In this document: positions 13,737 to 51,831 of the stretch, piece by piece | Layout: the number at the start of each line of letters is the position of its first letter | How positions within the stretch are numbered: the stretch's first letter is position 1 | Source: Adineta vaga | Taxonomy: Eukaryota > Animalia > Rotifera | Direction of reading: 5' to 3' | Assembly: GCA_021613535.1 (NCBI GenBank) | Contig: CP075496.1 | Span: 3,844,001 to 3,908,000 of the forward strand | DNA length: 64,000 bases | Translations under genes and position numbers: made by a program | The notes under the pieces: model-generated | Seen by the model: only the letters and a program-made list of their open reading frames with translations | The model's database searches: none | Told to the model about the DNA's origin: nothing

Positions 13737-14249
13737 CTTTATTTCGTTGGATAAAAATATCGAGTTCTTTTGCGGTTGAAATTGAAATTCATTCAGGCAT
13801 CATCTCTACCGTTTCATAGTTTGGACCTCTACAGAATTTTATGAACCAATAAGAATTGAACGCAGATGGCATCAGAATTACATTAGTATTTCGTTCATTG
13901 TAGATTGATTATGTCTATGTTATCTAAATGTCATTTACATCATCGAATCTATAATTTTCTAAATAAATGATTTGACATAAAACTGTATTATTAAGAATCA
14001 TTTGGGAAAAACTTTTATTCTTTTCATTATATATTTCTATTAGTGACATAGATATATTAAAGATAGAGATCATTTCAACATTTACCTACTCGAAAGGTTA
14101 ATATCTATCAAAAAAATAGGTGATTATTTCGAACGAAGAAAAAGTATATCATAGATGATAGCATTTGTAAAGTTTAGATCAAATTTAAAATGTGAATAAA
14201 TCATTTGTTGTATAGATAGTCACATCCTTGAGTGTCAATACATATTGGC

Positions 14250-16319
14250 ATGTCAATATCAATGAATGAGATTCATTTACCAATAGAAATCATAGATCAT
14301 GTAGATCAAACGAAGTTGAATATTAGAATACGTCGATTTGTTATTGATCGTGTACAAATGATTAAAAATGAATTGAAAGAAATCTTTACATTTCATCCAA
14401 AAGAATGGGTTGATTCGTTTCGTTGTAATTCATTCTATCCATTATTTGTTAAAGGTGATATCGATGGTTTTATTGCATTATTTATCAATACTCTAGCAAC
14501 ATTATTAGCAGTTATTTTAAGTTTACAACCAGTCTTAGGCAATGAAATTATCTATGAGAAAATTGTACCAGGGTAAATCGTTTGATATTAGAAAGAAACT
14601 TATTCGATTTTTTAACTCTAGAGTAGGATTATCTATGTTATGGGGTAATTTCTATTATGTTTATATGGCACGAAAACTAGCCTACAAAGAAAAACGTGGT
14701 GATGTATGTACTATGCCTTATGGAATTAATACTCCAGGTGCATTCGCTTTTATTTATATTATTATCTTACCAACATATTATGGATGTATTTCAACGCATG
14801 AAAAAAGTTATTGTCAAGAGTTAGCATGGCATGTTGCTTTAGCAAGTAATTTTATTACTGGTATTATTCTGTTAGTATTGAGCGTATTTGGTGAATTTAT
14901 TCGACAAAATACACCAAGTGTCGCTTTACTCTCATCAATTTCTGGTCTAGGATTTGTTTTCTTAGCACTAAATGAATATTTACCAATCGCAGCTACACCG
15001 ATTGTATCATTTGTACCATTTGCAATTGTTATGCTAGGATTTTTTGGACAAGGTAAAACTAAAATCAATTATTATCACCTAAAATTCTATCTTCTTCATC
15101 TTCTTCTTTGCTTATTCTAGTTGAGTTTGGTCCAGTTCCAGTCGCATTTGTAGCATTAATAATTGGTACTATTTTGGCTTGGGTAACATCACTCAATCAA
15201 CTTTCTGATGTACGCGAAGCAGTTCATCTTGTTAAAATTTACACACCTATCTTTCCGATCAAAGAAATATTTCGTCATTTTAATACGATTAGTACTTATC
15301 TTTCAACAACAATACCAACAGCTATATCAATTGCTATTGGAACTATTCAATGTATTGAATCAGCTAAACGTGCAGGTGATTTTTATCCAACAAGAGAAGC
15401 AATGTTTGCAGATGGAATGGGAACAATAATTGCAAGTTTATTTGGATCTATTTTTGGTATGACAAGTGAGTAAAATACGCGAATCGATTATGATCAGATC
15501 AAAAATCTTCTCTTTAGCTTACATTGGTCATTCAGCTTTCAAAAAAATGGGTGCTAAACAAGCGTATTCAATTGCACATGGTATTGTTTATTTGCCATTA
15601 TGTTTTCTTGGACTTAATGCTTTATTTATTTCTATTATTGCAATTGTTTCGATTAATCCTATTGTAGTGAGTAGTTTTTCTCTTTGAAATCATATCTATG
15701 AATAATCATGAATAGTTGAAACATATCATTGATTGTATAGATCTTTATTGGTTTGATCATTTGTGCTGATACTCTATCGATTACTCCTCAACGTCATTAT
15801 CCAGCATTTCTTTTTGGTATTATGTCAATTGTAGCTGATTGGGCACATGGCACAATTATTAATGGTGTGACTGCTGCTTATTCTACTTTTACCATATCGA
15901 ATGTTCAATTTTCACCGAATATTACATCAGCAATTTCAAGTTTTTCGTATCGTGGCTTAATTAATTTTGCTGGTGGATCACAATTACAATGTATTTTTAT
16001 CACGGCTATTATGATGTATATGACTGATCGCAAATTTATCCATGCAGCTGTTTGGTCGTTTCTAGCAGGAATTTTTGCATTTTTTGGATTGATTAATTCA
16101 AGTAATGTTGGTATTTTGATAAAGAATAGTGATGATGGTTGGCGATTTACCATTAGTTATATGTTGATGGTTATTTTATTCGGATGTTTAGAATATGCAC
16201 AACGAAAAAAATGGATTAAGGAACAAGAAACTGAACCTGATGATCTATCAAGTAACGAATGGATTGAATGGAAAAGACAACAAATGTTAACAGATGTCGA
16301 AAAAAACTTCACTAGTTGA
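14250..16319 (+). CDS. NCS2/AzgA-like xanthine-uracil-type permease, bacterial-like, 5 exons
   Basis: FVKGDIDGFIALF…GNFYYVYMARKLA…DVCTMPYGINTPG…IESAKRAGDFYP…YIGHSAFKKMGA; multiple TM helices; four ~46-75 nt GT-AG introns join the ORF-track fragments. Confidence 0.85.
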
Positions 16320-16370: not shown

Positions 16371-17396
16371 TTAACAAAAAGTTGGTGCATTTCTTTTCAA
16401 CCAATATATTTCATCAGGCCATGATGTATTTTCTTGTAAATCTAATACTTTACATTGATTATTTATTGGAATATAGTGACGTTGATTCAAAAATTCGATG
16501 ATGATTTTCACTTGATTGGCATCTTGATGAACAATTTTCCATTCCATTTGAATCAATGGAATATCTAATGTATCAAATATTCGATGGCCTGTTTTGAATA
16601 CGAAACTTTCACTTCCTTCGATATCCATTTTTATTGATACACTACGAATAGCATGTGCAAGTAAAATTGGAAGAACTTCATCAAACGTTATAGTTTTAAC
16701 AATATATGGATTAACGATCGGCAGATTCGTTTTTCCATGATAGTTTCGTGAAGGATGTATACTTTGCCCTCCGACATTGGTTGTATCTATGGATAATCGT
16801 AAATATTGTCCTGAGTGATTGAAAATTGCATTTTGAACTAGAACAACTTGATTATAAAGATTCCTCATTTGAATTGCTCGACGTAGACGAACAAGATTTG
16901 GTGCAAAACAATCAATAGCTAAAACGAATCGACCTAGTGTTGCAACATACATTGTATAAGTTCCAATATTTGCACCGATATCAATAAAATGCATATGTGG
17001 ATGACGAACAAGATATTGCAGAAGTCGTGTAACCTGTTCTTCTTCCCAAATCGAAGTTATTTCAGAAAATGCACCACTGACATATCGATCTCGTTTCGTA
17101 TCGTATAAACAAACATTTGTACTGATATTATGAAGTAATGGTTTTGTTTTCACACATCGAAATTTAGTGTTTTTTGTCGTTTCATACAAATCAACAAGTT
17201 GTACATTGGGTGAAATATTATATTGATATTCTTGTTGAATAGGTAAGTACTTGAATAGGATTCTTCTTACTCGATGTCTATCGAATATAAAAGAATAAAT
17301 ACATATGAATACAAGAAGAAAAATTAGAATCTTTCGTAATAGCTTCCAATCGTATAATAAGGAAAAGGGTCGTGTAATATTCCGCAGAAAGTTCAT
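16371..17396 (-). CDS. FkbM-family (Methyltransf_21) SAM-dependent methyltransferase with N-terminal membrane anchor, single exon
   Basis: FIDIGANIG SAM-binding motif and IKMDIEGSE motif; hydrophobic anchor ILIFLLVFICIYSFIF; likely start MNFLRN at 17396. Confidence 0.85.
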   Translation of the reverse strand: MNFLRNITRPFSLLYDWKLLRKILIFLLVFICIYSFIFDRHRVRRILFKYLPIQQEYQYNISPNVQLVDLYETTKNTKFRCVKTKPLLHNISTNVCLYDTKRDRYVSGAFSEITSIWEEEQVTRLLQYLVRHPHMHFIDIGANIGTYTMYVATLGRFVLAIDCFAPNLVRLRRAIQMRNLYNQVVLVQNAIFNHSGQYLRLSIDTTNVGGQSIHPSRNYHGKTNLPIVNPYIVKTITFDEVLPILLAHAIRSVSIKMDIEGSESFVFKTGHRIFDTLDIPLIQMEWKIVHQDANQVKIIIEFLNQRHYIPINNQCKVLDLQENTSWPDEIYWLKRNAPTFC

Positions 17397-18458
17397 ATGA
17401 ATTAAATCGACGTAGAAAAACACATTTGAGTATTTGAAAAAGAGTGTTTGTTCAGAAAAGTAAGTGTTTTTTCTTAAATTATTTCCTTCTTTTTTAAGAT
17501 TCATTAAAAGCGTGATTGTTGAGAGTTTCATTCCGTCTCTCTTTTCTCAACTAATTATTGACACAATCAGAAGAGAAAAAAATTGGTTTCTTTTTGAAAT
17601 AACTGAATGAAATAGCATGTGTCGACTGCTTACATTTCTGTCAGTTCTCATTAGTTTTCTACATATGATGCGTTATAGCGTTTTCCTGGAAATTACATGT
17701 ATTCGGATGTAAGATGAATTTTCCGGAAAACCAAAAAACCTTTTTGCAAAAACTCTTGATAGTCGAATTGGTTATTCTAAATCCACTATACAAAATTTTC
17801 ATTGAGGGTGCCATGAAGGTTGATGAGATTTATGTTTTCTAGCGCAGTCAAAATAAATAACACTCGTCGACCGTAACTCGCTTAACCCTCGACTGAAGAA
17901 GTGACAAAATGGAATTTATTGATTATTGTTCTCATAAGATTTTTCTTTGGAAGTATATATTTTTATAAAAAACGCACACTTCAAGCAATCATTTACTTTA
18001 ACATCAAAGTTGTCATCAACAAATATTTTTCCTTCTAGATCTAATCATTGCAGAGCATCTAAAGCATAAAAACTACCACTTATTACATTGATAATTTCAG
18101 TAAAATCAAACATTAGTGGTGTGCCGATATGATGAATAAGACGATTGGTCATGACCGATTGACCGATGGTAGCTGCTTAGACATTGCATGTCTCTAATAT
18201 ATAAGCGCGTGTTGTTTGTAACTTACGAGGGAACTTCACCAAGTGATACCCTCCGTTTGATCTGATATTCTGCGCATAAGTAGGGCTCATAGAGTAGATA
18301 CAGACCCCAAAAGGGTTGGTGCCATTGGCCTCTTGTTGTTGAGATACTGTACTTTTAAGGTACCGAGAAGACTGACTGCTGTGGTCCACCTAAAGGATAT
18401 CCGAAAAACTCATATTGGAACTTCGAGCTGAAATTTTTTATGAAGAGGTCTCACTGAA

Positions 18459-21169: not shown

Positions 21170-22112
21170 GCACCTCCTGTGGGACAGCTATGACAAAATT
21201 GAGTTTCCCCGAAAATGCTATAACGCATCAAATCATTTTCTAAAACTTTCCATACAATATGTATGATGACTAAAACTTCAGTGAAAGATAATTCCTGAAA
21301 TGTGATGACAACTATAATTTCCTCTTCGATTCGTCATTTTCAACGTAATTCAAGTCAAAGTACAATATTTTAATCGATAAAAAAAGCGATGAAAACTAAA
21401 AAATCAATCGAGATAGTCATTTCTAAACTAAATTGTTTTCGATAAAATCTGTTGTATTTTTAAAAATAATAAATCCGTTTTTTACGGGACTATTTAAAAA
21501 ATTAGCATTTTCATTAAAAAAAGTGCGCTGTACATATAATTGTTATCGGAGAATGTCGATACTAAAATGAAGTGTTATTTTAATTTATTTTCGTTATTAT
21601 CATACCAGAACAATGAAGACGAAAATATTTGAAATATTTGGTAAAATAGAGAAACTCAGCGTAATTTCGATATGATGAATACGCTTAGAAATACAGAAAA
21701 TGTGAACTGAAATATTCTTTTCAGTGATTTCAGATCTTTCATCTAACTAACAAACTCATGAGCAGATCACATACGCTTTCGATCGCATTAGAAGTGTTAT
21801 TATTGGATATTATTAACATCTAACATTAATATAAAGTATTTCAAACTACGTATTACTCAAGAATATAGATGATCGAAGATTTCCTCACTGAGACCTTAAC
21901 TTTCTGCATCACAATGACGAATCAGTTTCTTTCTCAAACATTTATCTATACCTCAATGATTACTGTGACACCAAACTGTCATAAGACACATTCATTTCTG
22001 AAATAATCTAATATTGGTTTATTCAACGTTTTCAAAACATTCTTTTATTAATTTTATGCGTAAGCTCTCAAGACAATTTAAATTGCTGTGAACTTTTCTT
22101 TTCATTTTATAA

Positions 22113-24200
22113 CTAATCAGCACTTGATGGCACAACAGTACAGTAACGTAAACTGCAACCAGGTGGTCTCGTTAAACGATAAACGTAAAACGATCCACAG
22201 TTTGTAACTTGTATATCGTTCCGAAAAATACAGCTATTACCATCCCATGAGTAACACACCGTTCCATTTGTAGTTGAGTATGTAGTATTCGGCATACTAC
22301 CTGAATACCAACCTCCTGCATCTGTACCACATCGACTGACCGCGGGCTGTGACGTTGGTATTTGAGTTCCACCTTCTCCAAAGAATCGAATCCATACTCC
22401 ACTTGCATTGAAAACAGATTGATCACACACACCATTAGAACCATTGTTATTGATGCTTCTTGAAGGATCATCGATAATCGTGTGTTCATAACATTGAGGA
22501 AAAGAAAAGGGAATACTTGTTGTCGTTGTCACTATACGGATGAAATTAGAAAATGTGTAATGAGCTCGTCTAGAAAGCAAAAAAGGGAATTATTCGACTC
22601 CGATCCAAACTTACATTCCGTAGTCATCGTAGTTGTAGAAACCACTGGTGTGTCAGTACAGTAACGTAAACTGCAACCAGGTGGTCTCGTTAAACGATAT
22701 ACGTAAAACGATCCACAGTTCGTTACTTGTATATCGTTCTGCCAGTTACAGCTTCTGCCGTTCCATGTGTAACACACCGTTCCATTTGTAGTTGAGTACG
22801 TGCTAGTATTCGGCATACTACCTGAATACCAACCTCCTGCATCTGTACCACATCGACTGACCGCGGGCTGTGACGTTGGTATTTGAGTTCCACCTTCTCC
22901 AAAGAATCGAATCCATACTCCACTTGCATTGAAAACAGATTGATCACACACACCATTAGAACCATTGTTATTGATGCTTCTTGAAGGATCATCGATAATC
23001 GTGTGTTCATAACATTGAGGAAAAGAAAACGGAATACTTGTTGTTGTAGACACTAAACGGTTGAAAGTTTAAAATATGTATCTGTCCTTTTCGAGAAAGC
23101 AAAAGAGGGAATTATCCGACTCCGGTGAAAACTTACTTTCTGTAGTTGTCGTGGTTGTAGAAATCGTCGGTGTATCAGTACAGTAACGTAAACTGCAACC
23201 AGGTGGTCTCGTTAAACGATATACGTAAAACGATCCACAGTTCGTTACTTGTATATCGTTCTGCCAGTTACAGCTTCTGCCGTTCCATGTGTAACACACC
23301 GTTCCATTTGTAGTTGAGTACGTGCTGTTTGGCATACTACCTGAATACCAACCTCCTGCATCTGTACCACATCGACTGACCGCGGGTTGTGACGTTGGTA
23401 TTTGAGTACCACCTTCTCCAACAAATCGAATCCATACTCCACTTGCATTGAAAACAGCTTGATCACATACAACGTTGGAACCATTATTATTGATGTTTCT
23501 TGAAGGATCATCGATAATCGTGTGTTCATAACATTGAGGAAAAGAAAAGGGAATACTTGTTGTCGTTGTCACTATACGGATGAAATTGGAAAATGTGTAA
23601 TGAGCTCGTCTAGAAAGCAAAAAAGGGAATTATTCGACTCCGATCCAAACTTACATTCCGTAGTCATCGTAGTTGTAGAAACCACTGGTGTGTCAGTACA
23701 GTAACGTAATTTACAGTTAGGTGGTCTCGTTAAACGATATACGTAAAACGATCCACAGTTCGTTACTTGTATATCGTTCTGCCAATTACAGCTACTACCT
23801 CTCCATGTGTAACACACCGTTCCATTCGTAGTTGAGTATGTAGTATTCGGCATGCTACCTGAATACCAACCTCCTGCATCCGTACCACATCGACTGACTG
23901 CGGGCTGTGACGTTGGTATTTGAGTACCACCTTCTCCAAAGAATCGAATCCATACTCCACTTGCATTGAAAACAGATTGATCACACACACCATTAGAACC
24001 ATTGTTATTGATGCTTCTTGAAGGATCATCGATAATCGTGTGTTCATAACATTGAGGAAAAGAAATGGGAATACTTGTTGTCGTTGTCACTAAACGGATG
24101 AAATTGGAAAATGTGTAATGAGCTCGTCTAGAAAGCAAAAAAGGGAATTATTCGACTACGATCCAAACTTACATTCCGTAGTCATCGTAGTTGTAAGAAT
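22113..24200. repeat. Four near-identical ~520-bp exon+intron tandem units
   Basis: Acceptors at 24090, 23572, 23053, 22532 (periods 518, 519, 521); long identical stretches including the introns. Confidence 0.95.
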
Positions 24201-38871: not shown

Positions 38872-39676
38872 ATGTTATCCAACACAATTTCATTAGTCAC
38901 TGGAGCAGGGAATGGTATTGGCAGAAGAGTAGCACAATTATTTGCTAATCAAGGCAGCCGAGTTTGTGGCGTGTGAGTTTCCTAAACGATTCTCCTCAAA
39001 TTTGATACCTAATATTCACAAAGATTAGAAACAAAGAAAATTGTTTTTTTGCTTTTTAAGAGATATGAAAACATTCGATTCATCCTGTGAACATTCCTTT
39101 GTTAGTGATATAAGTCAACGTTCGTCTGTTGTTAAACTAGCAGATGAGATCTATGCTCGTACTCAAGCATATCCAACAATTATTGTGAATGCAGCTGGTA
39201 TTACACGTGATGCCTTGTTATTAAAAATGCGTGACGAAGATTTCGATGATGTTATACGTGTTAATTTGAAAGGAACATTTCTTGTCAATCAAATCTTTTG
39301 TCAACGTCTTCTCGCATCGAAACCAACTGATTTAAAAGCAAGTATTATAAATATAGCAAGTATTGTTGGTAAATATGGAAATCCTGGACAATGTAATTAT
39401 TCAGCATCGAAAGCTGGCGTGGAAGCAATGACAAAATCAATGGCACAAGAATTAGGACGTATGGGTATTCGTACAAATGCAATTTTACCGGGATTTATTC
39501 AAACAGCTATGACTGATAAGATTCCCGATAAAGTTAAAGAAAAATTATTATCTATGGTTCCTTTGAATCGAATGGGTACAGTGGATGAAATTGCTCAAGT
39601 GTGCCTATTTTTAGGGTCCAATCAAATGAGTAGCTATGTGAATGGTGCAAGTATTGATGTTACTGGTGGTCTCTAA
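38872..39676 (+). CDS. HSD17B8: Short-chain dehydrogenase, HSD17B8/Ke6-like 3-oxoacyl-ACP reductase, 2 exons
   Basis: TGAGNGIG, P-x-IIVNAAGITRD, VNLKGTFLVNQ, SIVGKYGNPGQCNYSASKAGV, C-terminal IDVTGGL* typical of HSD17B8. Confidence 0.75.
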
Positions 39677-41474: not shown

Positions 41475-44400
41475 ATGCCACCAGAAGCAGATGGAAAGGA
41501 TAAAGCAACGACTGTGGACATACCAGAAGGTGCAGTTAAAAATTTAACCGTTGAAGAAATGTATGATAAAGAAAAATATGATTTATCAAGTATGGAAGAA
41601 GGTGACGTGTTTAAGATGCTTGAGTAAGTCAATCCAATATGATGGATTCAAATGTTTATCTTCTTGTAAACTTCTAGTGCAACACGGGATGGTTTAACAG
41701 ATGAAGAAGTAAATGAACGTCTGGAAAAAGTAGATATGATGTTATGAACATTGAAGATTTTTACGAAAGAACTTATTTTTCTTTTAGTTTGGTCATAATC
41801 GACTGGATCATAAAGAAAAAAGTCCAATTATAAAATTTCTCTTGTTTATGTGGAATCCACTCTCTTGGGTTATGGAAGCAGCTGCTATTGTAGCTATTGC
41901 TGTTTCGAATGGTGGTGGTCAACCACCTGATTGGGAAGATTTTCTTGGCATTGTTTTACTTCTTCTTGCTAATTCAATTATTGGTTTTATCGAACAAAGT
42001 AAAGCTGGAAATGCAGTCAAAGCGCTAATGGAAGCGTTAGCACCCGAAGCTAAAGCCAAAAGGAATGGTGAATGGAAAGTAATTGACGCAGGTGAACTTG
42101 TTCCAGGTGATATTATTAGTGTAAAATTAGGCGATGTTATACCAGCTGACGCTCGATTAATTGGTAACAGAGAAAATTGGCTTTTTATTCTATGTATACC
42201 GAACATTTTTTGTTCATAATTTTTAGCTGCACACGGTGGAGTTTCCATTGATGAAGCAGCATTGACGGGTGAATCGGTTCCTGCCGATAAAGTCGTTGGA
42301 GATGAAATCTTATCTGGTTCGACTTGTAAACAAGGTGAAGCGGAAGCTATTGGTAAGTGTAAATCAAATCAATATCGAAATAAAAAAATCTTTTTATCGT
42401 TCTTGCAGTTATTGGAACTGGTGTTAATACATTTTTCGGTCGAGCAACTACTTTAGTTAAAAGTGCTGGTGATGAAACTGGTCATCTGCAAGTAATTCTT
42501 GCTCATATTGGAAACTTTTGTATTTTTGGTATTGTGATATTTATTATTGCAGAAATTTTGGTTATGTAGTATGTATCGAAAAGAAAATCAACGCATTCAT
42601 ATTCCATTTATTCTCTATAATGATGTTCTTTTTCAGTGCTGGTTTTCGATATGATTATCGTCGTGGTATTAACAATTTATTAGTACTTTTAATTGGTGGT
42701 ATTCCAATTGCTATGCCAACAGTCTTATCGGTAACATTAGCTATTGGTGCTAAACAATTATCTCAACATAAAGCCATTGTTACACATGTTACAGCTATTG
42801 AAGAACTTGCAGCTGTGACAATTTTATGTTCCGATAAAACAGGAACATTAACATTAAATAAACTTGTGATTGATAAACCGACAATAAAAACATATTCAGA
42901 TGAAACAGCTGATGATGTTATTCACTATGCAGCTATTGCCTCTCGTATGGAAAATCAAGATGCCATGTGAGTTTAATAATAGAGTGGCAATCTTGTTACT
43001 TTATTCATTTTAGTGATACATGTATAACAGGTGCATTTGGTGATATCAAAAAAATACGAGAAGGTATTGAAGAATTAGATTTTCAACCGTAAGTTGATAA
43101 CGAGTTATTTTGTTAAAAAATGTTCTTTTTTTTCTATTATTAAGATTTAATCCTACCAATAAACGAACGGAAATTACTTATAAACTAACAAGTGATGGGA
43201 GTGTACATCGAATTAGTAAAGGTATGTCTCATTCAATATTGGATCTGTGTACACGAGATAAAACGAATGATCAAGTTATACAATTGAATGCTGATGTTGA
43301 TGAATTTGCAAAACGTGGTTTACGAGCATTGGCTGTTGCTGTGGAAGCTGTACCAAATGGAAAAGTAGATGGTGAAGGAAATGGATTTAAACTAACTGGT
43401 CTTTTACCAATCTATGATCCTCCACGTTCTGATACTAAAGAAACGATAGACCGTGCAGTTGAATTAGGTAAAAATCAAGCGTTATTTGATTTAAATAATT
43501 TTTATGAGATTTTTGTAATGTAATAGGTGTAAAAGTTAAAATGATCACTGGAGATCAATTAGCTATTGCTAAGGAAACAGGTCGACGACTTGGAATGGGT
43601 GATAATATGTTTCTATCAAAAACACTTACAGATGGACCACCTCCTGAATCAGGTTATCAAGATGTTGATGATTTAGTTTTGCATGCTGATGGTTTTGCTG
43701 GTGTTTATCCTGAACATAAATATAAAATTATTGAAAAACTACAAGAATTAGGTCATACAGTTGCTATGACTGGTGATGGCGTAAATGATGCACCTGCTCT
43801 TGCTAAAGCAAATGTAGGTGTTGCTGTAGCTGATGCTTCAGATGCAGCACGTTCAGCAGCAGATATTGTCTTAACAGAACCTGGTCTATCGGTTATTATT
43901 GAAGGTAAATTATACTATTTTTAAATAAAATTTCTTGAAAATAAGTCGTTTTCCTGAATAAATAGCTATCATTGGTTCACGACAAATTTTTCAACGTATG
44001 AGAAATTATTCGATTTACACATGTTCAATTACTATTCGTATATTGGTCGGATTTTCTATTCTTATCTTTGCTTTTAAATTCGATTTTCCATCATTTATGG
44101 TAAAGGAAAAAGAAAATCTTTTGTTTTCTATTCGTACTATTTCTCTGATATTCTCTCTAGGTACTTATTCTTGCCATACTTAATGATGGTACAATAATGA
44201 CAATATCAAAAGATCGTGTGAAACCATCACCATATCCAAATAGTTGGAATCTATCAGAAATATTTACCTATGCAATTTTTTATGGAATCTATTTAGCTGC
44301 ATCAACAGTTGTTTTCTTTGCTGTCATAGTTAAAACATCGTTTTTTCAAGATCATTTTCATGTTGATCATTTTGCACAAAATTCTCAATCGGATGATATT

Positions 44401-45231
44401 CCAGGATATAATCATTACAAATTACATTCAATTATTTATTTACAAGTTTCAACTATTAGTCAAGCTTTGATATTCATTACACGTTCACGTGGCTTTTTCT
44501 TTATGGAACGTCCATCTCTTGTATTAGTTGGTGCTTTTATGATTGCACAACTTGTTGCTACCTTTATTGCTGTATATGCTACATGGGAATTTACTGAAAT
44601 TGAAGGTTGTGGTTGGGCATGGGCAGGAATTGTCTGGATATGGAATCTAATTTGGTTTTTTCCATTAGATTTTGTTAAGGTAAACAAGAAATAAAACATG
44701 ATTGTCGTTTTGTATTTAAAGAAAATATTTTCTATTTAACTTCAGTTTGGACTTCGTGCTTACTTTGAACCAAAACATAAACAAGCTGTCGAAGAAGCTT
44801 TAGCAAAAGAACCATCAACACAAGAACAAATTGTTCGTCGTAGAAGTACTATTGCCGGTAGTGTTGGTGCACAATCACGTCGATCAACAATTCATACTAG
44901 TGAAGGTGGTGGACGTTCACGACGAGAAACACTTGCCCAAGCTGCTGCAAAATATTATGCACCAAATGTACAACATCTATCGACATCGCATCATCATAGA
45001 AATTTTGCTCGTATGTTGAAAGTTAATGGTGCAGATGCACCAAGAATTACTGTTGATCATGAGGAACTTCGACGATTTTCACTTGTACAAGTAAGAAAAG
45101 AGCAAACCTCTCATGACTGTTCATTTATCAATATTATCATACTTTTCTATTTTACCTAGGCTCATCATGCATCAAAATTACTCAAATCACCTAGTGTAAA
45201 TGCGAATCGTAGAACAACAACTGCCGTTTAA
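41475..45231 (+). CDS. P3A-type plasma-membrane H+-ATPase (PMA/AHA family), 13 coding exons
   Basis: [51 protein letters not shown] (phospho-Asp), [31 protein letters not shown] (proton-acceptor Asp), ALIFITRS; all exons in frame through 12 short GT-AG introns. Confidence 0.96.
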
Positions 45232-45355
45232 TAGACAATACATTCAATTGTCTTGATAATTGAAAGACTGTTTTTCTGTGTTTTATTGTGTGTGTGTGTG
45301 TGTGAATAATTTTCTTTTCATTTAAACCAAAAAAACTTATAATAATAAATTACTG

Positions 45356-50097: not shown

Positions 50098-51831
50098 GAA
50101 AAAAATTTTTCGACAGAATGTTATTGCGCGATGAACATCGACCGATAGACTAGAAAAGAAAAAACAAAATAGCCCATTGTACAATTGCCTTCTAACGGCC
50201 AAAGTAAATATGAACAGAACAGAGTTGCGTGCGCGTGTGGATGTGTATTTAAGATTAGTTTGTATAATAAGAAAAATTGGATTCTTTTGTTTTTAGAAGA
50301 TCATAATATATCCTCCGAAGTGGATCCAATACATCTAAATGAGAAACCTCGTCAATCAGTAGCTGTTTTTTCACTTTCATCATCATCATCTTCATCATCA
50401 CTAAACGAACCAATTGGAATACCATCATTAATGTCAACACGTATTTTACCCGTGGGTTGTTATCATGAACAAGAACAAAACACCTCAACAAAATCTAATG
50501 AAAATAATTCATCAACAACTCCATCATCGATTATGAAATGTTTCAATAGTTATCGTGAACAAATGCCGTTTACGTCAAGTTGTTCATCATCATCGTCATC
50601 CACTTCATCTACATCATCAACAAATCCAACAACAAAACGAGATTTTCTTTCATCAATTAAATCAGCTGGACATTATCTTCCAACAGTTGATTCTTTAACA
50701 ATTGAACAAAATCTTTTCAATATGGTTCGTTTTGATATTGTGAAATCGAATTTTTGTGATTATTATCAATTGGGAGATTTCGTTCGAAGTGGAGGATTTT
50801 CAGATATACATGAAGGCATTCGTTTAAGTGATAATAAACAAGTTGTAGTGAAATTTATTCCAAAAGAAAAAACAAAAAATTGGTTAATGGTTAATCAGAA
50901 AAAATATCCAGCAGAAGTTTTATTACATAAAGCTGTACATGAAATTCAAGGTAAGAGTTTTCCTTTATTTCTACAATCAAATTGTATATTGAAATGTTTT
51001 TCTTCCTTCTTCTAGGAGTTATTCATGTTTATGATTATTTTGAGAATGCTGAACATTGGATATTAGTGATGGAACGATTGAGTAATTGTCAAGATTTATT
51101 TGATTATTTGGAATCGAGCGATCATGGACGGCTTAATGAATCAACAGCAAAAAAATTCTTTCAACAACTAGTGCAAATTAATTTAGCTATGTTAAGGTAA
51201 ATATTAATGAATGATAGCATGTACTTAAAAAACATCATTACCCTTAGAAACAGCTGCTGTTTTCATCAGTCTAGAAATAGATCATTTCATTAAAAGAGTC
51301 TATGTTTATTTTAGTTTCTAACATTTGTAGTAATAATTAGAATGCGAATTAATTCGTTTTTTTTTAGAAAAGGTGTTGTTCATCGTGATCTTAAAAGTGA
51401 AAATATTCTTGTTAATCTCGATACTGACTCACTTGTCTTAATTGATTTCGGTGCTAGTGCCATATACAAATCGCCAGTATCACACTATTCAGATTTTCAT
51501 GGAACTAAACAATACAAATCACCTGAATACGTTCTTCGAAAACGTTATACGGGCGTACCATCAACTGTTTGGACACTTGGAGTATTGCTATACGATATGG
51601 TTAGCATCAACTGAATGGAACTGATTTGTAAATTTTTTATTATTTATTCTGTTTTAGGTATGTGGCAGTTTACCATTTGAAAATGAAGAAGAAATAACTG
51701 GACATAAATTAATATTAAAATCCCATTTATCATCTGAACTGAAAAATTTAATTCAACGATGTTTAGCACAAAATCCTGATAGACGACCATCTCTCGAATC
51801 CGTACTTGAACATGCTTGGATTAAAAATTAA
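48128..51831 (+). CDS. PIM-family Ser/Thr kinase-like with long Ser-rich N-terminus, 5 exons
   Basis: VVVKFIPK, P-x-EV-x-L, hinge [62 protein letters not shown]; first exon 48128-48272 is spliced across a ~2-kb intron to 50297. Confidence 0.85.
48660..49887. promoter_or_regulatory. Homotypic cluster of eight CAAGGT motifs in PIM intron 1 (candidate enhancer)
   Basis: Sites at 48660, 48880(-), 48942, 49074, 49125, 49255, 49368(-), 49882(-); three share CTACAAGGTC. Confidence 0.45.
48978..49014 (+). repeat. (TC)n microsatellite (one interruption)
   Basis: Direct reading; a (GA)n tract also occurs at ~50066-50092. Confidence 0.9.

What the first reader, a model, noticed from the sequence alone, without database searches (positions are those of the whole stretch)
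41475..45231. An animal with an intact fungal/plant-type P3A proton pump: possible horizontally acquired proton-motive circuit
Seen: a complete gene with all catalytic motifs and 12 host-style introns, embedded between animal genes, so contamination is unlikely. Knowledge: P3A H+-ATPases energise plant, fungal and some protist plasma membranes and are normally absent from animals, which use Na+/K+- and V-ATPases. Motifs such as [33 protein letters not shown] and ELRRFS recall the plant-like pumps of mucoromycete/basidiomycete fungi (from memory). Inference: with the foreign H+-symporter-type permease at 14.2-16.3 kb, the animal may have assembled a proton-driven uptake system from separate donors, useful in low-Na+ or acidic freshwater and moss habitats. 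The two genes are 25 kb apart, so any coupling is hypothetical, and the pump may already appear in bdelloid HGT lists.
Basis: partly seen in the sequence, partly recalled or inferred. Interest (0 to 1): 0.8.

Follow-up and report, generated by a model that had tools for sequence, protein, structure and literature searches.

The report
Fungal proton pump gene in rotifer
A bdelloid rotifer (an animal) carries an intact, spliced and conserved gene for the plasma-membrane proton pump that textbooks assign to plants and fungi only. It most likely came as genomic DNA from a Mucor-like fungus, because it still has some of the fungal introns and the fungal regulatory tail.

Summary
Window 41475-45231 (+) is a 13-exon, 12-intron gene with an open 1012-codon frame. 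Every intron is GT-AG and 47-71 bp long. All 12 junctions are spliced out in cDNA-like contigs from two studies.

Every exon up to TM10 has TIGR01647 (P3A plasma-membrane H+-ATPase) as its best match, in colinear order. The phosphorylated Asp, the TM4 PIA motif, the TM2 Asn, the TM5 Arg and the TM6 proton-carrying Asp are all in place.

The genome (100.8 Mb, 6 contigs, Adineta-like) holds at least five such genes. One is a syntenic duplicate on contig 1, with dN/dS about 0.18 against the window gene. Adineta, Rotaria and Didymodactylos all have orthologues.

In trees the rotifer pumps form one clade inside the fungal P3A-I group, sister to Mucoromycotina (96/95). An AU test does not exclude a position just outside the fungi (p 0.215).

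Introns 1, 2 and 12 lie at exactly the positions of Mucoromycota introns. A plant gene and a basidiomycete gene share none.

The proposed coupling to the NCS2 permease 25 kb away is untested.

The scan had already noted paralogues of this gene on other contigs of this genome (s1-489541, s1-485059), with the same reading. I found no paper that describes a rotifer P3A pump.

The parts
41475..45231 (+). Whole P3A H+-ATPase gene, ATG to stop: 13 exons, 1012 codons
   Evidence: Open spliced frame. Junctions seen in RNA-like contigs. Each exon up to TM10 has TIGR01647 as best hit, colinear over profile positions 14-755.
41475..41623 (+). Exon 1: N-terminal cytosolic segment
   Evidence: No family hit of its own. 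Aligns to the N-termini of fungal homologues around the motif GDVF.
41624..41677 (+). Intron 1 (54 bp, phase 2, after codon 49): same position and phase as the first intron of the Umbelopsis, Rhizopus, Phycomyces and Apophysomyces genes
   Evidence: Exact protein-to-genome maps of the fungal genes and their local sequence contexts. Spliced in X1 and X2.
41678..41729 (+). Exon 2
41730..41787 (+). Intron 2 (58 bp, phase 0, after codon 67): same position and phase as an intron of the Mortierella alpina gene. All four paralogues in the genome also break here.
41788..42163 (+). Exon 3: TM1-TM2 (with the TM2 Asn that matches AHA2 N106) and the start of the A domain
   Evidence: 164 bits to TIGR01647. 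168 bits to AHA2 structure 5ksd with the Asn aligned, against 72-78 bits to fungal PMA1.
42164..42226 (+). Intron 3 (63 bp, phase 1, in codon 193): 2 nt upstream of an intron shared by Umbelopsis, Rhizopus and Phycomyces
   Evidence: This is a near match, not an exact one.
42227..42352 (+). Exon 4: A domain with the TGES motif
42409..42568 (+). Exon 5: end of the A domain and TM3. The true donor is GTATGT at 42569.
   Evidence: The joint 42568>42637 is seen in X1, X2 and X5.
42637..42966 (+). Exon 6: TM4 with the P3A-specific PIA motif, and the phosphorylation motif DKTGT (42833-42847)
   Evidence: 152 bits to TIGR01647. 124 bits to 5ksd with the motifs identical. PIA is given as the P3A signature in PMC10763278.
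43014..43088 (+). Exon 7: N domain
43145..43467 (+). Exon 8: N domain, DPPR motif
43527..43904 (+). Exon 9: P domain ([16 protein letters not shown])
   Evidence: 208 bits to TIGR01647. Used as the probe that found the paralogues.
43966..44099 (+). Exon 10: TM5 with the Arg that matches AHA2 R655 (codon 44037-44039)
   Evidence: Alignment to 5ksd, ITIRI conserved. Role of this Arg: PMC10654040.
44161..44679 (+). Exon 11: TM6-TM10, with the proton acceptor/donor Asp that matches AHA2 D684 (codon 44185-44187)
   Evidence: 187 bits to AHA2 5ksd against 29-31 bits to fungal PMA1; the stretch around LNDGT is identical.
44746..45231 (+). Exons 12-13 (44746-45090 and 45160-45231): a 138-residue C-terminal tail with several RRxS/T sites. 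It carries the motif ELRRFS (45064-81) followed by LVQAHHAS, and ends in TTAV.
   Evidence: The motif is shared with Mucoromycotina, Mortierellomycotina and Dimargaritales tails. Four Dimargaritales pumps end in TTSV. The tail is 64-73% identical between Adineta and Rotaria.
45091..45159 (+). Intron 12 (69 bp, phase 0, after codon 989, inside the conserved tail motif): same position and phase as an intron of the Apophysomyces gene
   Evidence: Spliced in X1 and X2.

Best explanation
The gene encodes a working P3A-type (AHA-like, clade P3A-I) plasma-membrane H+-ATPase. An ancestor of all living bdelloid rotifers acquired it as genomic DNA from an early-diverging fungus close to Mucoromycota. 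The gene kept some of the donor's introns and its C-terminal regulatory tail. It gained further host-type introns, drifted to the host's AT-rich codon usage, and multiplied to at least five genes, partly through the old bdelloid genome duplication.

Mechanism (inferred from the family): ATP phosphorylates the Asp of DKTGT. The E1P-E2P change carries one H+ from the TM6 Asp, gated by the TM5 Arg and the TM2 Asn, to the outside. This acidifies the outer face and makes the membrane potential more negative. The basic, serine/threonine-rich tail probably holds the pump autoinhibited until it is phosphorylated.

Shown here: gene structure, splicing, family membership, conserved catalytic and proton-path residues, purifying selection, distribution across bdelloids, fungal affinity and shared introns.

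Inferred: proton transport, location at the plasma membrane, regulation through the tail, and physiological role.
For: Structure and splicing.

Family: all eight exons from TM1 to TM10 have TIGR01647 as best hit. Their bits add up to about 905 against a whole-protein cutoff of 615.5; this is a rough sum, because the joined model was not searched. Proton-path and catalytic residues align with AHA2 structure 5ksd.

Selection: dN/dS is 0.135/0.77 against the contig-1 duplicate and 0.18/0.82 against a contig-5 copy. The contig-1 copy keeps the same downstream neighbour gene.

Distribution: orthologues occur in Adineta ricciae (90% identity), A. steineri, four Rotaria taxa and Didymodactylos carnosus.

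Origin: the best non-rotifer relatives are Umbelopsis and Apophysomyces at 70-72% identity. Plants reach 54%, an ichthyosporean 43% and a basidiomycete 47%. In the tree, rotifers are one clade (100/99), sister to Mucoromycotina (96/95), inside the fungal clade (100/97 and 99/100).

Introns: 3 exact matches and 1 near match to 6 distinct Mucoromycota intron positions. A plant gene (about 15 introns) and a basidiomycete gene (6 introns) give no match.

Tail: shared motif.
Against: An AU test does not reject a tree in which all fungi form a clade with the rotifers outside it (p 0.215). Nesting inside fungi therefore rests on bootstrap support, introns and the tail motif.

The 'RNA' label of the runs is the tool's guess. 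Contigs show splicing, but not expression level, tissue or transcript ends.

No transport assay or localisation exists. Plants also place a P3A pump (AHA10/PH5) on the vacuole (PMC10654040), so a plasma-membrane location is not assured.

Other animal genomes were not searched directly. Their absence is inferred from lists of best hits only.
Confidence: 0.8

Rival explanations
1. Vertical descent. The P3A-I pump was present in the opisthokont ancestor, survived only in bdelloids among animals, and was lost everywhere else.
For: The AU test does not reject rotifers lying outside a monophyletic fungal clade. Ichthyosporea, which are holozoans, do have P3A-I pumps (PMC9708826; Chromosphaera P0091).
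Against: The rotifer pumps are 70-72% identical to Mucoromycotina pumps but only 43% identical to the ichthyosporean pump. That pump groups elsewhere in the tree. The introns shared with Mucoromycota are missing from the basidiomycete and plant genes. The tail motif is shared with early-diverging fungi. No non-bdelloid animal appears among the 120 best hits of two searches. This reading would also need many independent losses.
Confidence: 0.04
2. Fungal contamination or misassembly: the gene is not in the animal's genome.
For: The protein is 70% identical to fungal proteins.
Against: The gene lies on a megabase-scale assembly contig between eukaryotic host genes. Its GC3 is 13.5% and its introns are 47-71 bp, as in the host (median Adineta intron 55-58 bp, PMC5916493). 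There are five paralogues on four contigs, with synteny between contigs 4 and 1. Orthologues occur in independent assemblies of three bdelloid genera. An independent DNA run covers the locus.
Confidence: 0.01
3. The gene is real and expressed but repurposed. It may sit on an endomembrane (for example acidifying digestive vacuoles or the stomach syncytium, as AHA10/PH5 does on plant vacuoles), or carry another cation, rather than energise the plasma membrane.
For: Animals already have Na+/K+- and V-ATPases. The genome holds several other P-type ATPases. Plant P3A pumps can work on the tonoplast (PMC10654040). The rotifer family has split into a conserved clade and a fast-evolving one, which suggests subfunctionalisation.
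Against: All residues of the AHA2 proton path are unchanged. The tail, which in relatives regulates a plasma-membrane pump, is conserved. Nothing here speaks to location.
Confidence: 0.12
4. One reading: the pump and the NCS2 permease at 14.2-16.3 kb form one proton-driven uptake system assembled from separate donors.
For: The neighbouring gene does belong to the NCS2 nucleobase:cation symporter family, and its closest feature matches are bacterial. A proton pump is what such symporters need.
Against: No evidence of co-expression, co-localisation or H+ coupling. The two genes are 25 kb apart with many genes between them. Animals have their own Na+-coupled NCS2 members (SLC23; from my own knowledge). 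The four pump paralogues lie elsewhere in the genome.
Confidence: 0.1

Closest known systems
P3A-I plasma-membrane H+-ATPases of Mucoromycota (e.g. Umbelopsis isabellina P0181, Apophysomyces ossiformis P0186, Rhizopus microsporus P0209)
   Same: 70-72% identity over about 956 residues. Sister group in the tree. Same intron positions after codons 49 (phase 2) and 989, and almost the same at codon 193. Same tail motif E[LM]RRFS..VQ..HA.
   Different: The host is an animal. There are nine further introns. GC3 is 13.5%. The tail is longer and ends in TTAV, which the Mucoromycotina tails seen here lack. The family has expanded to at least five genes.
Dimargaritales (Kickxellomycotina) P3A-I pumps (Dimargaris, Dispira, Tieghemiomyces)
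   Same: 65-67% identity. Same tail motif, and a very similar C-terminal end: RTTSV against RRTTTAV.
   Different: The Dimargaris gene has no introns. In the tree these pumps group with Mortierellomycotina, not with the rotifers.
Arabidopsis AHA2 (PDB 5ksd), the reference plant P3A pump
   Same: Same subclade type (AHA-like). The TM and catalytic exons score 124-187 bits against it, compared with 29-78 bits for fungal PMA1. N106, R655, D684 and DKTGT are conserved.
   Different: About 54% identity to a plant pump. No intron is shared with the plant gene examined. The tail is not the plant R domain and does not end in YTV. Steger et al. 2022 found the plant R domain only in streptophytes.
Fungal PMA1 (Neurospora 1mhs/7ny1, yeast 7vh5), clade P3A-II
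   Same: Same family and same chemistry.
   Different: Far more distant: 29-31 bits against 187 bits in the TM6-TM10 exon.
Other horizontally acquired genes of bdelloid rotifers
   Same: Foreign origin, host-type introns, expression and linkage to host genes, as described for bdelloids in general (PMC3499245, PMC5916493).
   Different: The donor is a eukaryote and some of its introns were kept. The gene is a primary membrane energiser rather than a metabolic or defence enzyme. It is not mentioned in the papers I could search.

Membership tests
P3A plasma-membrane H+-ATPase (TIGR01647) | Best match to the family profile over its full length, above the curated cutoff | tested here: met
   Eight exons match profile positions 14-755 in order. 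TIGR01647 is always first by a wide margin. Summed bits are about 905 against a cutoff of 615.5. The sum is rough, because the joined protein was not searched.
P3A plasma-membrane H+-ATPase (TIGR01647) | P-type catalytic core: DKTGT phospho-Asp, TGES, and the hinge [11 protein letters not shown] | tested here: met
P3A plasma-membrane H+-ATPase (TIGR01647) | P3A-specific PIA motif at the TM4 helix break | tested here: met
   GGIPIAMPT is identical to AHA2. Motif definition from PMC10763278.
P3A plasma-membrane H+-ATPase (TIGR01647) | Proton path: TM6 Asp (AHA2 D684), TM5 Arg (R655), TM2 Asn (N106) | tested here: met
   Alignments to 5ksd. Roles of the residues from PMC10654040.
P3A plasma-membrane H+-ATPase (TIGR01647) | ATP-driven, vanadate-sensitive H+ export at the plasma membrane | not testable with these tools
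   Needs yeast complementation, a transport assay and localisation.
P3A-I (AHA-like) subclade, fungal branch | Falls with P3A-I sequences, not with PMA1-type P3A-II | tested here: met
   PDB scores. Tree. Clade naming after PMC9708826. No P3A-II sequence was in my tree.
Horizontally acquired gene (fungus to bdelloid) | Nested within the donor group with support, and absent from the recipient's relatives | tested here: inconclusive
   Bootstrap/SH-aLRT values of 96/95, 100/97 and 99/100 support nesting. The AU test does not reject rotifers outside fungi (p 0.215). Other animals were not searched directly; none is among the best 120 hits.
Horizontally acquired gene (fungus to bdelloid) | Donor-specific characters other than sequence similarity | tested here: met
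   Three exact and one near intron-position match with Mucoromycota, none with the plant or basidiomycete gene. Shared tail motif.
Plant-type R domain regulated through 14-3-3 (penultimate pThr, YTV end) | Homologous R domain with Regions I/II and a YTV terminus | tested here: not met
   The tail ends in TTAV and aligns with fungal tails, not plant tails. It could still be a mode-III 14-3-3 site or a class-I PDZ ligand; that is an idea from memory and was not tested.

The most novel reading that the evidence does not exclude
Bdelloid rotifers run a second, fungal-style proton economy beside the animal sodium economy. A family of at least five regulated P3A pumps exports H+ across the plasma membrane of some tissue (gut syncytium, integument or protonephridia). 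This energises H+-coupled symporters, many of them also acquired from microbes (such as the NCS2 permease in this window), and so aids uptake from dilute, acidic moss and soil water. The retained fungal tail (RRxS/T sites and a TTAV end) has been wired into animal kinases and into 14-3-3 or PDZ scaffolds.
Probability: 0.2. Interest if true: 0.85.

Novelty: new member of a known kind. Interest (0 to 1): 0.6.

Why it matters
Reviews describe P3A proton pumps as belonging to plants and fungi, with the Na+/K+-ATPase as the animal counterpart (PMC11051447 and PMC6985207 abstracts). Here is an animal lineage that has kept, expanded and expressed such pumps for its whole history.

If they pump protons at the cell surface, bdelloids would be a natural experiment in adding H+-based energisation to an animal cell. 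That bears on how they feed and regulate ions in dilute or drying habitats, and on how foreign H+ symporters can become useful after transfer.

The retained donor introns are direct evidence for transfer of genomic DNA from one eukaryote to another. They also narrow the donor to a Mucoromycota-like fungus, and fungi are known enemies of bdelloids (PMC11258130).

One practical note: antifungal compounds aimed at this pump class could affect these animals.

Tried and rejected
1. A site-heterogeneous (C20/PMSF) tree of 66 rows was killed by the memory limit. All trees therefore use LG+G4.

2. The AU test of 'fungi monophyletic, rotifers outside' gave p 0.215, so that tree is not rejected. I do not claim statistically proven nesting.

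3. A word search restricted to the tail (residues 858-995 of P0175) returned bdelloid proteins only. It shows that the tail is conserved but gives nothing on the donor.

4. WDR36/Utp21, the SDR gene and the gene just downstream are single-copy in the genome, so they gave no synteny information. Only the gene at 50185-51015 did.

5. Literature searches for rotifer, bdelloid or Adineta together with P3A, H+-ATPase or P-type ATPase found nothing relevant. Steger 2022, Palmgren 2023, the two-motif inventory paper, Boschetti 2012 (text and supplements held), Nowell 2018 and Nowell 2024 do not mention such a pump.

6. Pfam and NCBIfam find nothing in the tail or in exon 1.

7. My first automatic splice-path search found no path because its donor threshold was too strict. 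The hand-built model was then corrected by the RNA contigs.

8. Exact gene models for the four paralogues were not built. Their intron positions come from the borders of ungapped tblastn matches and are good to a few residues only. One in-frame stop in my contig-2 codon blocks may be a registration error, and I make no claim about it.

9. The joined 1012-residue model was never sent to a database, family, structure or fold search. Those searches were done exon by exon, by reference. The joined sequence was used only inside local scripts, for the frame check, pairwise alignments, intron mapping, dN/dS and trees.

10. No structure prediction or complex prediction was run, because family membership did not need it and I claim no binding partner.
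Full report
**What is there**

Window 41475-45231 (+ strand) holds a 13-exon gene. I placed the splice sites by hand and checked that the spliced frame is open. All 12 introns are GT-AG and 47-71 bp long. That is the size class typical of Adineta genes, whose median intron is 55-58 bp (PMC5916493).

Laying public contigs on the locus settled the model. Contigs from runs X1 and X2 (one study) skip every one of the 12 introns, and X5 (a second study, a different organism label) skips 9 of them. The skips fall at the predicted borders. Run X9 covers the introns and so behaves as DNA. Two details came out of this:
- The donor of intron 5 is GTATGT at 42569, not 42566. The protein therefore has 1012 residues.
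- The odd 'CA..AG' joint at 42963 is only a C/T polymorphism at 42964, which is also seen in the DNA run.

The tool only guesses that these runs are RNA. Intron-free contigs next to an intron-bearing DNA run are what cDNA gives.

**What it is**

I searched the model exon by exon, by reference. The joined protein was not sent to any search tool.

Eight exons, from TM1 to TM10, each have NCBIfam TIGR01647 (plasma-membrane proton-efflux P-type ATPase, type IIIA) as best hit. They cover profile positions 14 to 755 in order. Their scores add up to about 905 bits, against a whole-protein cutoff of 615.5. Pfam sees the generic E1-E2_ATPase, Cation_ATPase_N and Hydrolase domains.

Against solved structures, the membrane and catalytic exons match Arabidopsis AHA2 (5ksd) far better than fungal PMA1. 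The TM6-TM10 exon, for example, scores 187 bits against 29-31 bits. The pump is therefore of the AHA-like type, called P3A-I by Steger et al. 2022.

The residues that define proton transport in AHA2 are unchanged:
- the TM6 aspartate in LNDGT (window 44185-44187);
- the TM5 arginine in ITIRI (44037-44039);
- the TM2 asparagine;
- the TM4 PIA motif;
- DKTGT (42833-42847) (roles from PMC10654040 and PMC10763278).

**Genomic setting**

The genome has 100.8 Mb in six contigs, and the window is contig 4, 3.844-3.908 Mb. This matches a chromosome-level Adineta assembly.

WDR36/Utp21 lies 3-6 kb upstream, followed by a short-chain dehydrogenase. CDS GC is 36%, with GC3 of only 13.5%, in a window of 31% GC. 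Contamination is not tenable.

**A gene family, not a single gene**

The P-domain exon finds four more P3A loci: one on contig 1 (86% identity in that exon), a tandem pair on contig 5 (83%), and a more divergent copy on contig 2. All four align over nearly the full length of the protein.

- The contig-1 copy breaks at all 12 intron positions of the window gene. It also keeps the same downstream neighbour: the window gene at 50185-51015 has its only paralogue 5-6 kb downstream of the contig-1 pump, on the same strand. The two are therefore duplicates of a segment, most simply from the old bdelloid genome duplication.
- dN/dS between them is 0.135/0.77. Against a contig-5 copy it is 0.18/0.82. 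This is clear purifying selection.
- The contig-2 copy has a different and sparser intron set.

**Distribution**

The library of protein representatives and two word searches return bdelloid proteins from Adineta ricciae (90% identical to the window protein), A. steineri, Rotaria sordida, R. magnacalcarata, two unnamed Rotaria, and Didymodactylos carnosus. Several paralogues appear per species, and UniProt auto-names most of them 'Plasma membrane ATPase'.

No other animal appears among the best 120 hits of either search. Other animal genomes were not searched directly.

**Origin**

After the rotifers, the best hits are all early-diverging fungi:

| Group | Example taxa | Identity to window protein |
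|---|---|---|
| Mucoromycotina | Umbelopsis, Apophysomyces, Rhizopus, Mucor, Lichtheimia | 70-72% |
| Dimargaritales | Dimargaris | 67% |
| Mortierellomycotina | Mortierella | 65% |
| Plants | Corymbia | 54% |
| Labyrinthulid | Hondaea | 50% |
| Basidiomycetes | Artomyces | 47% |
| Streptophyte alga | Chlorokybus | 44% |
| Ichthyosporean | Chromosphaera | 43% |

A maximum-likelihood tree of 52 sequences (LG+G4, ultrafast bootstrap / SH-aLRT) gives the following (the quick trees agree):
- rotifers form one clade: 100/99;
- rotifers plus Mucoromycotina: 96/95;
- that group plus Mortierellomycotina and Dimargaritales: 100/97;
- that group plus the basidiomycete branch: 99/100.

Two deep rotifer subclades both contain Didymodactylos and Adineta. 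The first duplications therefore predate the bdelloid radiation.

The caveat is the AU test. The best tree with all fungi held together and the rotifers outside is 22 log-likelihood units worse, but it is not rejected (p 0.215). I could not run a mixture model.

**Independent evidence from introns**

I mapped six fungal proteins exactly onto their own genomic loci.

- **Intron 1** (phase 2, after codon 49) is at exactly the position and phase of the first intron in Umbelopsis, Rhizopus, Phycomyces and Apophysomyces.
- **Intron 2** (phase 0, after codon 67) matches a Mortierella alpina intron.
- **Intron 12** (phase 0, after codon 989, inside the conserved tail motif) matches an Apophysomyces intron.
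- **Intron 3** is 2 nt from an intron shared by three Mucoromycotina genes.

The local alignments at these sites are unambiguous.

Two further points fit this. The contig-2 paralogue has an intron near codon 94, where Mortierella has one. The breaks near codons 50 and 67 are present in all five rotifer paralogues.

The controls share no position with the rotifer gene: a plant gene with about 15 introns and a basidiomycete gene with 6. The Dimargaris gene has no introns.

With about 3000 possible positions, 12 rotifer introns and 6 distinct fungal positions, about 0.02 exact matches are expected by chance. Three were found. The simplest reading is that an intron-bearing fungal gene was transferred as genomic DNA. 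Its introns were kept at their positions and shrank to host size, and about eight or nine more were gained. No single sampled fungus has all the shared introns, so the donor is best described as an unsampled or early-branching Mucoromycota-like lineage.

**The tail**

After TM10 come 138 residues with no family match. Their end carries ELRRFS followed by LVQAHHAS. The same motif occurs in Mucoromycotina, Mortierellomycotina, Dimargaritales and an unnamed relative of the basidiomycete branch. It is absent from plant, algal and agaricomycete tails.

Most members of the conserved rotifer clade end in TT[AGP][VL]. Four Dimargaritales pumps end in TTSV.

The tail is 64-73% identical between Adineta and Rotaria, and it holds several RRxS/T sites. 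I infer that it is a retained autoinhibitory, phosphorylation-controlled regulatory domain. It is not the plant R domain. That the terminus could bind 14-3-3 (mode III) or PDZ domains is an untested idea from memory.

**How it most likely works**

By homology, it is a single-subunit electrogenic pump that exports one H+ per ATP through the Asp/Arg/Asn path and is held in check by its tail. Its site of action in the animal, and its purpose, are unknown.

Acid secretion or H+-coupled uptake at the gut or body surface, or pH control during drying and rehydration, are reasonable guesses. An endomembrane role is a real alternative.

The gene at 14.2-16.3 kb is an NCS2-family permease (PF00860 at 8.9e-07, TIGR00801, and bacterial NCS2 clusters by language-model features). 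Nothing links it to the pump beyond lying in the same 64-kb window.

**Novelty**

The protein family and bdelloid gene acquisition are both well known, and orthologues are already auto-annotated in public databases. Still, I found no paper that notes a P3A pump in rotifers or in any animal.

This scan had already flagged paralogues on other contigs. A follow-up there reached the same reading, including retained fungal introns (s1-489541 and s1-485059). I saw those notes only after my own tree and intron maps.

I rate it a new member of a known kind, of real interest to transport physiologists and students of gene transfer.

Noticed in passing
window 14232-16319 (+): Multi-exon gene for an NCS2-family permease (weak hits to PF00860 Xan_ur_permease and TIGR00801; nearest clusters by language-model features are bacterial NCS2 permeases). 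Its origin and coupling ion were not established.
   Followed up: partly
window 16371-17531 (-): A 386-residue open frame with a Methyltransf_21 (FkbM) domain, a family mostly found in bacteria. It sits right beside the permease and is a possible further acquired gene.
   Followed up: no
window 39041-39676 (+): Short-chain dehydrogenase/reductase exon (adh_short_C2, 1.4e-43) between WDR36/Utp21 and the pump. It is single-copy in the genome. Its origin was not examined.
   Followed up: no
window 22001-24000: A GC-rich patch (0.40-0.41) in a window that is otherwise 0.26-0.36. I did not look at it.
   Followed up: no
window 45290-45306: A (GT)n microsatellite just after the stop codon, in the likely 3' UTR. 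The reads tool also reports contigs cut at 45271-45313.
   Followed up: no
window 41586-41834: One low-depth contig of run X2 joins 41586 to 41834 (skips 247 bases, ends CA..AA, only 27 letters on one side). This is probably a paralogue or an assembly artefact rather than an alternative splice.
   Followed up: no
G000:C5:5097000-5111000 (L012, L013): Two tandem P3A copies about 9 kb apart. They are equally similar to the window gene in the probe exon, and both lack the intron at codon 530.
   Followed up: partly
G000:C2:11238500-11242000 (L014): A divergent P3A paralogue with a sparser, partly different intron set. It has a break near codon 94, where Mortierella has an intron. One in-frame stop appeared in my rough codon blocks, so its intactness is unverified.
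   Followed up: partly
protein P0151 (Didymodactylos carnosus, 1015 aa): This public gene model looks like a fusion. Only about 55-60% of it aligns to P3A pumps, and UniProt names it an ADP-ribosyltransferase.
   Followed up: no
window 50185-51015 (+) and G000:C1:8554700-8555500 (-): A gene with no Pfam family, conserved at 68% between contigs 4 and 1 in the same position relative to the pump copies. It is a useful synteny marker of unknown function.
   Followed up: partly
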